Assembly (NCBI RefSeq): GCF_009834535.1
Contig: NC_045705.1
Span: 8,556,001 to 8,620,000, forward strand
DNA: 64,000 bases
Origin: Camelus ferus
Taxonomy: Eukaryota
Direction of reading: 5' to 3'
This document shows, piece by piece, positions 15,625 through 63,108 of the stretch. The translations under genes were made by a program, and so were the position numbers. The number at the start of each line of letters is the position of its first letter. Positions within the stretch are counted from its first letter, which is position 1. Below the pieces are notes generated by a model. That model saw only the letters and a list, made by a program, of their open reading frames with translations, was not told where the DNA came from and made no database searches.

Positions 15625-16225
15625 GAAAGAGAATAACCATTTCATTGTTAGTGCAAAGAAATGCAACAGATTTCTGTTTGTTAATCTTGTGTCCTGCTCC
15701 CTTGCTGAATTCATTTATCAGCTCTAGTAGATTTTGTGTGGAGTGTTTAGGGTTTTCTATATCATGTCATCTGCATATAGTGACAATTTTACCTCTTCTC
15801 TTTCAATTTGGATCCCTTTTTAATTTCTTTTTCTTGTCTGATTGTTATGGCTAGGACTACCAATACTGTGTTCAATAGAAGTAGTGAGAGTGGGCATCTT
15901 TGTCTTGTTCCAGATTTTAGCAAGAGGGTTTTTGACTTTTCACTGTTGAATATTATGTTGGCAGTGGATTTGTCATAAATAGCATTTGTTATGAAGAGAT
16001 ATATTCCCTCTATAACCACTTTGGTAAGAGTTTTTATCATGAATGGATGTTGAATTTTATGAAATGTCTTTCTGCATCTATTGAGATGATTGTGTGATTT
16101 TTGTCCTTTATTTTGTTGATGTGGTGTATCACATTGAGTAATTTGGAAGCCATCCATCTTTGTGCCCTTGGGATGAATCCAAATCTTTTTTATGTGTTGC
16201 TGGAATCGGTTTGCTAATATTTTAT
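15625..16225 (-). mobile_element. L1 ORF2 reverse-transcriptase fragment inside an L2 remnant
   Basis: ORF 15789..16283 encodes [11 protein letters not shown]...[33 protein letters not shown] (L1 RT). It is frameshifted and has no 3' UTR or poly(A). Confidence 0.9.
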
Positions 16226-16729
16226 TAAGAAACAAAACATGATTCCTAAAGCCTCCTTCAGCATCCTTAGCATGAAGTAGCACAGGATCTTCCTCCTACC
16301 TTGTCCCAGCCCCTTTCTTTCTTGCTGACTCTTTTCTCCAGCTCCTTTCCTGCCCCTCCACCCCACTTTCTCCCATGCCTGCCCCTTCTCCCTCTTTTGC
16401 TCTCATCTCCCTCTCAGAAAAATACCAAAGTTCTTTTCTTATATCATGCATAAAGGTCTTGCTTCCATCTAAAATAGCTTATCAAATTTTTTTAAGTAAA
16501 TTTTTATAGAATTATAATAAACACTGACAAATCTGAAAGTAAAGCTTGATGAAGCCCAGGCATCCTGCTGAGGCTTCCCTCCCTCCCATTCCCCCCCAAC
16601 CCCAGTGGGTCCTAGACACTCAGCATGCTGCCTGTGCTCTTCAGAGCTGCCTCTTCCCTACCCTGGAGGTTCTCTGTTCATCCAGAGAGGCCCTCTTCAT
16701 TTTAATCACCCAAGAGAACATGCTGAAGA

Positions 16730-49099: not shown

Positions 49100-49740
49100 G
49101 GCTAGAAAATGAGAAGAAACCAGAAACGAGAAGGAGAGATAGATTTCCTGAAGGTGGAGGAAATGACCAGTTGGGTCAAAGGCTGTGACAGGTCAGGTAA
49201 GACGAGGACTGAGAACTGAGAACCAGATTTAGCCAACCTGAGGTCATTGATCACTTTGACCAAAGCAGTTTTGCTGTCATGGTTCTGGTGAAATTCTGAG
49301 TGGAGTATGGAATTGGACACATCAGGTATCGACTTTTTGAGAACTTTTTCTGCAGAGAGGGGCAAAGAAATGGGGTGGTAGCTGGAGGGGGTAATGTCTC
49401 TTTTCTAATATGGGAGAGATGAGAGTGTATTCACAATGCTGATGCGAATAATCCAGCGTGGGGGGAAACTGATGGTGGAGGAGGAAGAAGGAAGAATTCC
49501 TACAGCAGCATCCTTGATAGGTCAGAGGGAGCGGGACTGGGTCCACCGGTGGAGAGCCCGCCCACTGGAGCTTAGATGCCGTTTCTTTATGATAACGAGG
49601 AGATGGGCAGGGTCTACGTGCACAGCTGCCTGGAGGCGGGTCGATGGGCTGGGCGCCCATGCAAGTCATCCTTCTGACGGCATCTGTCCTTTCTGTGCCA
49701 TAGGAAGCAAGGTCACTCATGAGAGTGGTTGCTACTAAAT
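49100..49740. mobile_element. L2 fragment
   Basis: gaggactgagaactgagaaccagatttagc...gaggtcattgatcactttgac. Confidence 0.65.
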
Positions 49741-49916
49741 GAAATAAAATTCCCTCGAGAACAAATGAAACGTCCATTTTTAGAAACATAACTCAAAGAG
49801 TGATGGTGACGTGATCTAGTGGGTAAAGAGCCTTTGCTGAAAACCCTGAAAGAATGAGGTTCACACGAAACAGCAACTGAAATTCAAGTCACATGTAGAC
49901 GATGCTCTGAATTTTC

Positions 49917-49922
49917 TTTATT
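49917..49922 (-). terminator. Probable PIWIL4 polyadenylation signal AATAAA
   Basis: tttatt on the plus strand, with a GU-rich downstream element (cagttgctgtttcgtgtg on the minus strand). Alternative ATTAAA at 50099-50104. Confidence 0.6.
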
Positions 49923-50164
49923 TTCTAACAACTATTTAAACCACTCAACAAAATGCTCTATAACATTATTCAGAAAAACTTCTGCAAAATTTAGGGTGGA
50001 AATTAGACCCCACTCACCTACCATCAAAACATCATGCAAACAGTTACTTTCTTAGAAGATATTTAGTTTTTTGGTATTACTTACAGGTGATGGTACATTT
50101 TAATTCCATAGACCAGAATGAGAATTTACCCCAAGGACATAACTCTAAAATAAAGCAATGTAGT

Positions 50165-50332
50165 GGGGAGGGTATAGCGCAGTGGTAGAGTGCATGCCTA
50201 GCATGTAGGAGGTCCTGGGTTCAATCCCCAGCACCTCCATTAAAGATAAATAAATAGAAACTTAATTACTTCCCCCCAGAAAATTAAATAAATAAATAAA
50301 TGTTTAAAAAATAAAATTAAATAAATAAAAAT
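50165..50332 (+). mobile_element. Vic-1-type SINE in the PIWIL4 3' UTR (antisense to the mRNA)
   Basis: Full body and tail. 16-bp TSD aaaataaag(c/t)aatgta (50147-50162, 50333-50348). Confidence 0.95.
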
Positions 50333-50526
50333 AAAATAAAGTAATGTACGTTTCTTTTGAACCATTTCACATTTAAGTTGTTTTGGCTTTTTTTTTTTCC
50401 TCCAGAAGGTAAAACTCAACTCAATCTCCTTCCCCGAGGCACAGCCTCGAGCTCCTGGCAGATTTGTACAAAGTACACCAACTGCTCCTCAGACTCCTCT
50501 TCTAAGGATGCCAGTGGTTCATGTCA

Positions 50527-50643
50527 TCACAGGTAGAAGAGAGAACTGGCTAATTCCAGATTTGGTTCCTTATGAATGCTTTGTGCCACCAGGAAGGTCA
50601 GCTTGTGTGCGTACTGACACGGAGCCGGGACACTGATTAGGCC
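50527..50643 (-). CDS. PIWIL4: PIWIL4 last coding exon: [38 protein letters not shown]
   Basis: Found by manual translation. Acceptor tcctcag, 39 codons ending TGA, followed by a second [13 protein letters not shown] catalytic-His motif and the PIWI-type C-terminus LFYL. Confidence 0.97.
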
Positions 50644-51157
50644 CTGAGGAGGGAAAAGTATTGACAGTAGCTAAGAGGATAACCTGCGCTTCAGAGTGAT
50701 TTCTTCTCCTGAGTTTTTTCATCCACTAGTTACCTATACGACAGAAAGCGGCATCAGTCCTTAATAACTAAAAACAACCACCCAAGGGCAACCTTGTTCC
50801 CTGGGAACTTGCATTCACTGGGCAGGATGGGGGTGGGGAGGGCCAGTCTGGTTTCATTGTGCCAAGACCTGGGAGCCACACACTTAGGGCTCATCAAAGT
50901 TTCCTGTGACTTGATGTTCCAAGGGGCTCAGAGCAAATCTTGGCTTTAGACTTTGAGAGCATCTCTGGGCTTAATGCCCGGGAACACAGGACAGAGCCAG
51001 GTCTGTTACTTTCCCACCAGACACAACATCTGAGTTGGTTTCAACTTCCTCACCTGTAACTTGGAAATAGCAATGTCCTGGTTTCCTCCCAGGCTGCACT
51101 GGCATAAGATAACGCATATAATAAAGTCTTCTAGAAATCATCAATGCCAATGCATTA

Positions 51158-51283
51158 TTTTTTGTGGTGGGGGGAGTAATTAGGTTTATTTCTTTATTTA
51201 TTCTTAATGGAGGTACTGGGGATTGAACCCAGCACCTTGTGCATGCATGCTAAGCGTTCACTCTACCACTGAGCTATACCCTC
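51158..51283 (-). mobile_element. Vic-1-type SINE in the last PIWIL4 intron
   Basis: Reverse body; TSD core aatgcatta (51149-51157, 51292-51300). Confidence 0.92.
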
Positions 51284-51319
51284 AGGCAATTAATGCATTA
51301 TAATAGTTATTGTTCTGGA

Positions 51320-51402
51320 GGGGAGGGTAGAGCTCAGTGGTAGAGTGCAAGCTTAGCATGCACGAGGTCCTGGGTTCAAACCCCAGCACCTCCATTAAAA
51401 AA
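51320..51402 (+). mobile_element. Vic-1-type SINE (short-tailed), head-to-head with the previous copy
   Basis: ggggagggtagagctcagtgg...ggttcaaaccccagcacctccattaaaaa. Confidence 0.92.
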
Positions 51403-51598
51403 TAAGTTATTATTTTCCGTCTATGACAGACTGGGTTTCACCTGCTGTGGAATTAGGGAGTCATTCATTTATGCATCCCTCCTCTGTGAAAAGCAAGGCT
51501 TTGTGCCGGGGGTCAGGACGCAGAGGTGAATCAGGTGACAGTCCCTGGGTGGGCACCTGGAGTGCCAGACTGCACCCAGGTGAAGAGCCGCCACTCAC

Positions 51599-51746
51599 CG
51601 GCCAGTTGTAGTACAGGTGGCACAGTTTGAACGTGAGTCTCTGCATGTGATCGGGCTTCAGGCCGTTGTCATCGTAGATGACGTTGTAGTAGGTGGGGCT
51701 AACGGTTCCGCGACAGGCGGCCTGGCTGATCAGGTAGAAGTCATAC
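51599..51746 (-). CDS. PIWIL4: PIWIL4 penultimate coding exon: [49 protein letters not shown]
   Basis: Lies within ORF 51461..52027. Acceptor ccctcag, donor gtgagt, 148 nt, phase 2/0. Conserved YDFY and GTVSPT motifs. Confidence 0.97.
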
Positions 51747-51853
51747 CTGAGGGGGGACGGGAGGACTGTGAGGATGGAGGCACGGGGAACGGGGCCGAGC
51801 CGGACAACGCGCAGGGACCATTTTGTTAAAAGCGGATCTTCTAACAGACTTGC

Positions 51854-52149: not shown

Positions 52150-52624
52150 TTTTAATTAATTTATTTTTAATTGAAGTATAGTGAGTTTACAATATTGTGT
52201 CAATTTCTGGTGTACAGCATAATGTTTCAGTCATACATATACTGTTCTTTTTCATATTCTTTTTCATTATAGGTCACTATAAGATATTGAATATAGCTCC
52301 CTATGTTATACAGCAGAAACTTGTTGTTTATCTATTTTATATGTAGTCATTAGTATCTGCAAATCTTGAACTACCAATTTATCCCTTCCCACTCCCTTCC
52401 TGCACTGGCAACTATGAATTTGTTTTCTATGTCTGTGAGTCTGTTTCTGTTTTGTAAACAACTACATTTGTGTCTCTTTTTTTTAGATTCCACATGTGAG
52501 TGATATCATATGGTATTTTTCTTTCTGTTTCTGGCTTACTTCACTTAGAATGATGATCTCTAGGTCTATGCATGTTGCTGCAAGTGGCATTATTTTATTC
52601 TTGTTTATGGCTGAGTAGTATTCC

Positions 52625-52676
<52 letters not shown>

Positions 52677-62439: not shown

Positions 62440-62565
62440 GGGGGAGGGCATAGCTCAGTGGTAGAGCACATGCTTAGCATGCACCAGGTCCTGGGTTCAA
62501 TCCTCAGTACCTCGGTCAAAAAAATGCAAATAAATAAATAAACTAGTTACCTTCCCCCACCAAAA

Positions 62566-62614
<49 letters not shown>
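62440..62614 (+). mobile_element. Vic-1-type SINE with an A tail followed by (TA)20
   Basis: ggggagggcatagctcagtgg...ggttcaatcc; (TA)n at 62575-62614. Confidence 0.9.
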
Positions 62615-62619
<5 letters not shown>

Positions 62620-63108
62620 TATTTTTGTATTACTCTATGCATTTAGCTAAAAAGTTAGAAAATCTGGTTGAAGTAAATTTCTATGAAAATACAAATGATC
62701 AAAACCAACTCAAAAAAAGAGAAAACCTAAAAAAAAAAAAATCTGACATAGAGTTCAAGTTAAAGTGGGACTAACAATTCTCTAACACTGCATCTCCATG
62801 AAAAATTTAAAATAAAAATCATTAGGTTAATGAGACCGAGATATTCCGCTAATCTGTATGATTCAGATTACAAGATTTGTTTTTCCTTAGTAGCACCTTT
62901 TTGGAGCCTGGAATATTTAGCCTTAATCAATCAGTGGACAAGTACTTATCAATTTAGCAGTTCTGTGCTGACACTATGTTAGGGGCCAGAGGCTACAGAA
63001 AAAAATCCCACGCAGAGGAATTTATAGATCTTGTTTCTAGATGTAGGTTCGCCCTCCTACATGTATATATGGTTGGACTGTCCCAGTGCCCAGTGGCCTT
63101 TTAAACCT

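What the first reader, a model, noticed from the sequence alone, without database searches (positions are those of the whole stretch)
50147..50348. PIWIL4 mRNA carries an antisense tRNA-Ala-like SINE in its 3' UTR: a possible built-in small-RNA feedback sensor
Seen: a TSD-flanked Vic-1 copy lies ~180 nt after the stop codon and upstream of the first canonical poly(A) hexamers, in antisense orientation. Established: Vic-1 is nearly a plain tRNA-Ala(AGC) sequence; PIWI proteins load TE-derived piRNAs, PIWIL4 has been reported to bind tRNA-derived fragments, and TE sequence in 3' UTRs can make mRNAs piRNA targets. Inference: every sense Vic-1 RNA, sense Vic-1 piRNA and tRNA-Ala fragment is complementary to this mRNA over up to ~70 nt. 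The camelid piRNA effector could therefore be tuned by the abundance of the genome's main young SINE or by stress tRNA halves, and the UTR could itself seed antisense Vic-1 piRNAs. This would be a camelid-specific autoregulatory circuit.
Basis: partly seen in the sequence, partly recalled or inferred. Interest (0 to 1): 0.7.

Follow-up and report, generated by a model that had tools for sequence, protein, structure and literature searches.

The report
Old SINE inside camel PIWIL4 3' UTR
A tRNA-Ala-derived camelid SINE really does sit, backwards, inside the 3' untranslated region of the camel PIWIL4 gene, but it looks like an ordinary, ancient, neutrally kept insertion, and nothing seen here shows that it works as a small-RNA feedback sensor.

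Summary
Observation confirmed. The minus-strand gene is PIWIL4 of a Camelus species. Its stop codon is at 50529-50527. A 170-nt tRNA-Ala(AGC)-headed SINE (50163-50332, plus strand) is flanked by 16-nt target-site duplications (15/16 identical) and begins 179 nt after the stop.

No AATAAA or ATTAAA lies between the stop and the SINE. A spliced, full-CDS camel RNA-seq contig is 100% identical to the window. It runs from the last exon through the duplication and 55 nt into the SINE tail.

The distal UTR and its AATAAA (605 nt after the stop) are conserved in pig, deer and bat. A vole-like transcript ends 12 nt after the orthologous AATAAA. So the SINE landed inside the ancestral UTR.

Alpaca and dromedary carry the insertion; pig and bat have the empty site. 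It therefore predates the split of Old- and New-World camelids and is not young.

The head shows no excess conservation, and the tail is decaying. The window holds 10 such SINEs in 64 kb, so a hit in a UTR of this size is about a 6-7% chance event.

Mouse Piwil1, Piwil2 and Tdrd1 are already reported to carry piRNA-targeted SINEs in their mRNAs. The feedback-sensor idea is untested here, not new in kind, and unlikely as a dedicated circuit.

The parts
50527..50644 (-). Last coding exon of PIWIL4, ending in the residues LFYL and the stop codon TGA at 50529-50527
   Evidence: Pfam Piwi match. tblastn to camelid PIWIL4 proteins is 100% over 38 aa. RNA contig L001 is colinear from 50644.
50349..50526 (-). 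Proximal 3' UTR, 178 nt of unique sequence. It contains a conserved A11 tract and a weak AAGAAA hexamer at 50356-50351, but no AATAAA or ATTAAA.
   Evidence: Hexamer scan. 100% covered by RNA contig L001. Alignable to pig, deer and bat.
50333..50348 (.). Right target-site duplication, AAAATAAAGTAATGTA
   Evidence: Read directly. Present once in the bat and pig orthologues.
50240..50332 (+). A-rich SINE tail with (AAAT)n. In the mRNA it reads as a U-rich stretch holding all 8 AUUUA pentamers of the UTR.
   Evidence: RNA contig L001 covers 50332 down to 50278. Alpaca has a 35-nt shorter tail.
50163..50239 (+). tRNA-Ala(AGC)-derived SINE head, Vic-1-like. A box TAGCGCAGTGG and B box GGTTCAATCCC.
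   Evidence: ARAGORN. Rfam tRNA 35.3 bits. 93.75% identical to the consensus of the nine other window copies.
50147..50162 (.). Left target-site duplication, AAAATAAAGCAATGTA
   Evidence: Read directly. 15/16 identical to the right copy.
49897..50146 (-). Distal 3' UTR, inferred. It is conserved in pig, deer and bat, with ATTAAA at 50104-50099 and the conserved AATAAA at 49922-49917. The predicted cleavage site is about 15-25 nt further on.
   Evidence: Hexamer scan. Alignments. Camelus-Vicugna identity is 98.4% against about 96.4% for neutral DNA. The vole-like transcript L007 ends 12 nt after the orthologous AATAAA, and the bat transcript L006 runs past the ATTAAA.
51598..51747 (-). Penultimate coding exon of PIWIL4 (Piwi domain)
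51204..51399 (.). Two more Vic-1-like copies in the last intron, in inverted orientation: 51204-51283 on the minus strand and 51320-51399 on the plus strand. The minus-strand copy is complementary to the UTR copy.
   Evidence: blastn. Inverted repeats I1-I4, 87-93% complementary.

Best explanation
This is an ordinary retroposed copy of the camelid tRNA-Ala-derived SINE (Vic-1 type). L1-type target-primed reverse transcription inserted it at an A/T-rich site in the middle of the ancestral PIWIL4 3' UTR, before Old-World and New-World camelids split.

It is transcribed as part of the PIWIL4 mRNA in antisense orientation. It lengthens the UTR from about 430 nt to about 630 nt. It is retained because it is tolerated, not because it does a dedicated job.

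Shown:
- the insertion and its target-site duplication;
- its presence in Camelus and Vicugna, with empty sites in pig and bat;
- a spliced transcript that reads into the SINE tail.

Inferred:
- that the transcript continues through the tRNA-like head to the conserved AATAAA at 49922-49917;
- that the element is selectively neutral.
For: - SINE anatomy and target-site duplication.
- Ten related copies in 64 kb, so about a 6.6% chance of a hit in a 430-nt UTR.
- PIWIL4 identity.
- RNA contig L001 (Logan assembly of SRR33129673) holds the full 849-aa CDS, is spliced, and is 100% identical and colinear from 50644 to 50278.
- The same insertion with the same duplication is present in Vicugna pacos and C. 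dromedarius, and the site is empty in pig and bat.
- The distal UTR, with ATTAAA and AATAAA, is conserved. The vole-like transcript ends 12 nt after the orthologous AATAAA, and the bat transcript runs past the insertion site and past the ATTAAA.
- There is no excess constraint on the head (1/75 mismatches against a 3.6% neutral rate, P=0.24), and the tail is decaying (15% mismatch plus 35 gap columns).
- Deer carries an unrelated insert of about 120 nt, with its own direct repeats, at the same spot. The site therefore tolerates insertions.
Against: - Only one camelid transcript contig was found, and it stops in the SINE tail. Inclusion of the tRNA-like head in mature mRNA is inferred, not seen.
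- With 75 nt and 3.6% divergence, the conservation test has little power to detect constraint.
- SINEs in 3' UTRs can destabilise mRNAs through piRNAs in mouse (PMC4352877). The antisense tail also adds AUUUA motifs. Some effect on mRNA stability therefore cannot be excluded.
Confidence: 0.8

Rival explanations
1. Generic piRNA-mediated decay. As reported for B1/B2-bearing mRNAs in mouse spermatocytes, sense-strand Vic-1 piRNAs loaded in a slicing PIWI protein pair with the antisense SINE in the PIWIL4 UTR. They lower the mRNA level by a modest amount. This would be a by-product shared with every other mRNA that carries the SINE, not a PIWIL4-specific sensor.
For: - The SINE lies in the UTR.
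- Watanabe et al. 2015 showed that SINEs in 3' UTRs confer 2-3-fold PIWIL1-dependent instability. They also listed Piwil1, Piwil2 and Tdrd1 as SINE-bearing piRNA-pathway mRNAs (PMC4352877).
Against: - No camelid small-RNA data were examined.
- The copy differs from the other copies by 9-20%, with exact runs of only 11-23 nt.
- The antisense head folds into a stable hairpin of -27.6 kcal/mol, z = -2.7, which may limit access.
- From general knowledge, PIWIL4 is expressed mainly in fetal and undifferentiated germ cells, not in the pachytene cells where this decay was shown.
Confidence: 0.1
2. AU-rich element gain. The antisense (AAAT)n tail reads in the mRNA as overlapping AUUUA and UUAUUUAWW motifs. 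ARE-binding proteins bind these motifs and alter PIWIL4 mRNA stability or translation, independently of small RNAs.
For: All 8 AUUUA pentamers and 5 UUAUUUAWW nonamers of the Camelus UTR lie in the SINE tail. Pig and deer UTRs have none. This part of the SINE is directly seen in the RNA contig.
Against: The motifs are not conserved. Alpaca keeps only 2 pentamers and 1 nonamer after a 35-nt loss, which argues against selection for them. No binding or stability data exist.
Confidence: 0.08
3. One reading: a dedicated, camelid-specific autoregulatory circuit. In it, PIWIL4 output is tuned by Vic-1 activity or by tRNA-Ala fragments through the antisense SINE, and the UTR seeds antisense Vic-1 piRNAs.
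For: - The geometry is right: antisense SINE, inside the UTR, fixed in camelids.
- Human PIWIL4 (Hiwi2) was reported to bind tRNA-derived small RNAs in a cancer cell line (PMC4132735).
Against: - No excess conservation of the head, and a decaying tail.
- The insertion is old, and the window copies are 80-91% alike, so the family here is not young.
- At least four further copies in both orientations lie in the last 13 kb of the same pre-mRNA, so there is no specificity.
- The hit is within chance expectation.
- Complementarity to a genuine tRNA-Ala was not tested, and the copy has four broken stem pairs.
Confidence: 0.03
4. Most mature PIWIL4 mRNA ends before the tRNA-like head. In this reading a new proximal poly(A) site is used. 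It would consist of the weak AAGAAA at 50356-50351 followed by the U-rich antisense tail acting as a downstream element. The head would then be largely absent from the mRNA.
For: AAGAAA lies 171 nt after the stop, and the U-rich SINE tail starts about 20 nt downstream of it. The only camelid RNA contig does not reach the head.
Against: - The RNA contig runs at least 70 nt past the AAGAAA with no A-run at its end. That pattern fits an assembly break in low-complexity sequence, not a poly(A) site.
- The downstream AATAAA and distal UTR remain conserved in camelids at 98.4%.
Confidence: 0.1

Closest known systems
Vic-1, the simple tRNA-derived SINE of Camelidae (Lin et al. 2001, cited in SINEBase, PMC3531059)
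   Same: tRNA-derived head with A and B boxes, a short body, an A-rich tail, target-site duplications, many dispersed copies, and restriction to camelids at this locus.
   Different: Nothing in kind. This copy is simply an aged member: 6% from the local consensus, with four broken tRNA stem pairs. The published consensus could not be fetched for a direct comparison.
SINE sequences in 3' UTRs of mouse piRNA-pathway mRNAs (Piwil1, Piwil2, Tdrd1) targeted by PIWIL1-piRNAs (Watanabe et al. 2015, PMC4352877)
   Same: A SINE embedded in the 3' UTR of a PIWI-family mRNA, which offers complementarity to SINE-derived piRNAs.
   Different: In mouse there are piRNA maps, cleavage signatures, mutant up-regulation and reporter data. 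Here there are none. The gene is PIWIL4 and the SINE family is unrelated (tRNA-Ala against B1/B2/ID).
Alu-derived and other SINE-derived AU-rich or U-rich elements in 3' UTRs (general knowledge)
   Same: An antisense SINE tail contributes U-rich and AUUUA motifs to a UTR.
   Different: The motif number is not conserved between Camelus and alpaca. No functional evidence exists.

Membership tests
Vic-1 / tRNA-derived simple SINE | tRNA-derived head with Pol III A and B boxes | tested here: met
   ARAGORN calls tRNA-Ala(AGC) at 50168-50239. Rfam tRNA scores 35.3 bits against a gathering score of 29. A box TAGCGCAGTGG and B box GGTTCAATCCC were read.
Vic-1 / tRNA-derived simple SINE | A-rich tail and flanking target-site duplication | tested here: met
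   Tail at 50240-50332. 16-nt duplications at 50147-50162 and 50333-50348, 15/16 identical. Empty site in pig and bat.
Vic-1 / tRNA-derived simple SINE | Dispersed multi-copy family sharing head and body | tested here: met
   10 copies in the window, 80-91% identical, with a shared body motif after the head. Further copies in the alpaca locus.
Vic-1 / tRNA-derived simple SINE | Match to the published Vic-1 consensus | not testable with these tools
The name rests on the family description and on camelid restriction at this locus.
3' UTR-embedded element | Lies in the terminal exon downstream of the stop and is present in spliced RNA | tested here: met
   Spliced RNA contig L001 is colinear from 50644 to 50278, through the duplication and 55 nt of the SINE tail.
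3' UTR-embedded element | The whole element lies upstream of the poly(A) site actually used | tested here: inconclusive
   There is no canonical hexamer before the SINE. The conserved AATAAA lies 605 nt after the stop, and the orthologous vole-like transcript ends 12 nt after it. No camelid read-through of the head was seen.
piRNA-targeted SINE in a piRNA-pathway mRNA (Watanabe 2015 type) | Complementary piRNAs and slicer cleavage products map to the SINE | not testable with these tools
   No camelid small-RNA or degradome data are accessible.
piRNA-targeted SINE in a piRNA-pathway mRNA (Watanabe 2015 type) | The element is kept by selection | tested here: not met
   Head 1/75 mismatches against 3.6% neutral, P=0.24. 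Tail 15% mismatch plus 35 gap columns between Camelus and Vicugna. The test has low power.
Class II AU-rich element | Overlapping UUAUUUA(U/A)(U/A) nonamers, conserved among relatives | tested here: inconclusive
   Camelus has 5 nonamers and 8 AUUUA pentamers, all in the SINE tail. Alpaca has 1 and 2. The motifs are present but not conserved.

The most novel reading that the evidence does not exclude
Camelid PIWIL4 mRNA is measurably repressed through its antisense Vic-1 by sense Vic-1 piRNAs, or by 3' tRNA-Ala fragments. This would give the piRNA pathway negative feedback on one of its own effectors. It would be an independent, lineage-specific parallel to the SINE-bearing Piwil1, Piwil2 and Tdrd1 mRNAs of mouse.
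Probability: 0.05. Interest if true: 0.5.

Novelty: new member of a known kind. Interest (0 to 1): 0.15.

Why it matters
If the SINE did regulate PIWIL4, it would be a second, independently evolved case of a transposon copy wiring a PIWI gene into its own pathway. As it stands, it is one more lineage-specific SINE in a 3' UTR.

It is useful mainly as a clean, dated insertion marker. It is shared by Camelus and Vicugna and absent from pig, deer and bat. It is also a caution that gene-plus-repeat coincidences are common at camelid SINE densities.

Tried and rejected
(1) I looked for further camelid transcripts that carry the 3' end. A homologue search with the C-terminal 290 aa of the camel protein found no additional camelid RNA contigs. 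Only L001 exists in the searched range. A third search for still shorter fragments was not run, because de Bruijn contigs break in the SINE and the chance of success was judged low.

(2) The primate and human-like Logan contigs (P0181-P0185, P0272) were deliberately not fetched. A bat contig and a vole-like contig were used instead.

(3) Notes from earlier windows of this genome held nothing on this locus.

(4) I considered and rejected the idea that the tRNA hit is a real tRNA gene. It has a duplication-flanked A-rich tail, four broken stem pairs, nine paralogues in the window and empty orthologous sites.

(5) I considered dating the copy from its 6% divergence to the local consensus. This was rejected as too crude, because the consensus rests on nine copies and is affected by subfamily structure and CpG decay. 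The phylogenetic bound, older than the Camelus-Vicugna split, is used instead.

(6) Complementarity to a bona fide tRNA-Ala was not computed. No genuine tRNA-Ala gene sequence was available from a tool, and typing one from memory would be unreliable.

Full report
**What is in the sequence**

Reading 49,500-51,500 shows a tRNA-like block on the plus strand followed by an A-rich (AAAT)n tail. The whole element is bracketed by AAAATAAAGCAATGTA (50147-50162) and AAAATAAAGTAATGTA (50333-50348). This is a 16-nt target-site duplication with one mismatch.

ARAGORN calls tRNA-Ala(AGC) at 50168-50239. Rfam's tRNA model scores it 35.3 bits against a gathering score of 29, with four non-standard stem pairs. 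It is therefore a decayed tRNA-like head, not a tRNA gene.

The window holds ten such copies, eight on the plus strand and two on the minus strand. They are 80-91% identical to this one. They share a head and a short body before the tail. This matches the description of Vic-1, the simple tRNA-derived SINE of camels (SINEBase, PMC3531059). The copy is 93.75% identical to the consensus of the other nine, with a longest exact run of 23 nt.

**The gene**

Minus-strand ORF pieces match the Pfam Piwi domain in order along the profile and PIWI-clade structures. An exhaustive HMMER search, followed by a look-up of names, showed that the closest full-length relatives are all 'piwi-like protein 4' (Tupaia, Sigmodon, Condylura, Nanorana). 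PIWIL1 proteins are clearly more distant.

A second search returned the camelid PIWIL4 proteins and one unnamed 849-aa protein, P0207, from a Logan RNA assembly. P0207 is 99.3-99.6% identical to the Camelus PIWIL4 proteins and 97.8% identical to that of Vicugna.

The window carries the last eight coding exons: 62108-62034, 58653-58455, 57515-57404, 55750-55676, 54297-54143, 51983-51853, 51747-51598, and 50644 to the stop at 50529-50527. The right duplication therefore ends 179 nt after the stop, the SINE body occupies UTR nt 195-364, and the SINE is antisense to the gene.

**Is it in the mRNA?**

There is no AATAAA or ATTAAA on the minus strand between the stop and the SINE. The first ATTAAA is 423 nt and the first AATAAA 605 nt after the stop.

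The decisive result is contig L001 (Logan assembly of run SRR33129673, 2,973 nt).
- It contains the complete, spliced 849-aa CDS.
- It is 100% identical to every exon in the window.
- Its last block is colinear with the genome from 50644 to 50278. That takes it through the stop, the 178-nt proximal UTR and the duplication, and 55 nt into the SINE tail.
- It ends in low-complexity sequence with no A-run. That looks like an assembly break rather than a poly(A) site.

The tRNA-like head itself is not covered by this contig.

**Comparative evidence**

Genomic loci were fetched for Vicugna pacos (L002), pig (L003), Cervus (L004) and C. dromedarius (L005). Two RNA contigs were also fetched, one from a Miniopterus-like bat (L006) and one from a vole-like rodent (L007). 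All were aligned to the camel UTR.
- Alpaca and dromedary carry the same SINE in the same orientation with the same duplication.
- Pig and the bat transcript have a single empty site.
- Deer has an unrelated insert of about 120 nt, flanked by its own 12-nt direct repeats and with a T-rich leading end, at the same spot. This A/T-rich site has therefore accepted retroposons twice, independently.
- The sequence beyond the insertion is well conserved in pig, deer and bat, including the ATTAAA and especially the AATAAA.
- The bat transcript runs past the insertion site and about 70 nt past the ATTAAA.
- The vole-like transcript ends 12 nt after the orthologous AATAAA.

The simplest reading is that the ancestral PIWIL4 UTR was about 430 nt long and ended at this AATAAA. 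The SINE inserted in its middle, giving about 630 nt in Camelus and about 596 nt in alpaca.

**Age and selection**

Because Camelus and Vicugna share the insertion, it predates the split of Old- and New-World camelids. It is not a young copy.

The Camelus-Vicugna mismatch rate is 3.6% in the last intron and the downstream intergenic DNA.
- The SINE head has 1 mismatch in 75 nt (Poisson P=0.24), so there is no detectable excess constraint.
- The tail has 15% mismatches plus 35 gap columns.
- The distal UTR is somewhat conserved, with 4 mismatches in 249 nt (P=0.05).

At the local density of ten copies per 63 kb of non-N sequence, the chance of at least one copy in a 430-nt UTR is about 6.6%. 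Many hundreds of camelid genes should therefore carry one.

**What it might do**

In the mRNA the antisense head folds into a stable hairpin (-27.6 kcal/mol, z = -2.7). The antisense tail supplies all 8 AUUUA pentamers and 5 UUAUUUAWW nonamers of the Camelus UTR. Alpaca keeps only 2 and 1, and pig and deer have none.

A sense-oriented copy in the last intron (51204-51283) is 87-89% complementary to the UTR copy about 1 kb away. It also forms a tight inverted pair with its neighbour at 51320-51399. Such pairing could form double-stranded RNA only in the pre-mRNA.

**Literature**

Keam et al. 2014 (PMC4132735) support the statement that human PIWIL4 (Hiwi2) binds tRNA-derived small RNAs in a cancer cell line.

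Watanabe et al. 2015 (PMC4352877) showed four things:
- SINEs make up most of the piRNA-complementary retrotransposon sequence in up-regulated mouse mRNAs (retrotransposons 68.5% of the complementary sequence, SINEs 83.2% of those).
- B1 and B2 in a reporter 3' UTR give 2-3-fold PIWIL1-dependent instability.
- SINE sequences are present in 12.9-46.4% of the compared mRNA sets.

So a SINE in a PIWI-gene UTR acting as a potential feedback handle is a known idea, and SINEs in UTRs are common.

**Verdict**

The evidence available points to a tolerated, ancient insertion. There is no extra conservation, the tail is decaying, the element gives no specificity against the other copies in the same pre-mRNA, and the hit is within chance expectation.

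I put about 80% on neutral passenger, about 10% on a generic SINE- or ARE-type effect on mRNA stability, and about 3-5% on a dedicated autoregulatory circuit. About 10% goes on the separate possibility that most transcripts end before the head. These readings are not all mutually exclusive, so the figures are not meant to add up to 100%.

Noticed in passing
L004 (Cervus canadensis), about 59387+175 to +305, orthologous to window ~50340: Deer carries an unrelated insert of about 120 nt, with a T-rich leading end and 12-nt direct repeats (TGTTTTATTTTA). It sits at the same point of the PIWIL4 3' UTR where camelids have the SINE. This is an independent antisense retroposon hit at the same A/T-rich target.
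   Followed up: partly
window 51204-51283 (-) and 51320-51399 (+): Two Vic-1-like copies lie in inverted orientation only about 37-40 nt apart in the last PIWIL4 intron, 89-93% complementary. They would form a long hairpin in the pre-mRNA. The minus-strand copy is also 87-89% complementary to the UTR copy about 1 kb away.
   Followed up: partly
window ~49893-49900: Camelus (this window and dromedary) lacks 7 nt (TGTTTAT in alpaca, pig and deer) of the GU/U-rich stretch just downstream of the conserved AATAAA. This could weaken the ancestral poly(A) site's downstream element.
   Followed up: no
window 50388-50398: An A11 tract in the proximal UTR is conserved in alpaca, pig and deer. It is a likely internal-priming site for oligo-dT libraries, to bear in mind when reading 3'-end data.
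   Followed up: no
window 15789-16283 (-): An ORF fragment has a weak reverse-transcriptase match (Pfam RVT_1, E=1e-5, below the gathering score). It is probably a decayed LINE ORF2 remnant in the intergenic DNA downstream of PIWIL4.
   Followed up: partly
window 52600-52670 and 62560-62640: A (CA)n microsatellite and a (TA)n microsatellite lie in PIWIL4 introns. The (TA)n directly follows the tail of the Vic-1-like copy at 62441.
   Followed up: no
window 50163-50358 (+): The UTR copy keeps consensus-like A and B boxes. The first TTTT on its own strand is at about 50355-50358, just outside the SINE. If Pol III transcribed this copy, it would give an RNA of about 195 nt that is exactly antisense to the PIWIL4 UTR.
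   Followed up: no
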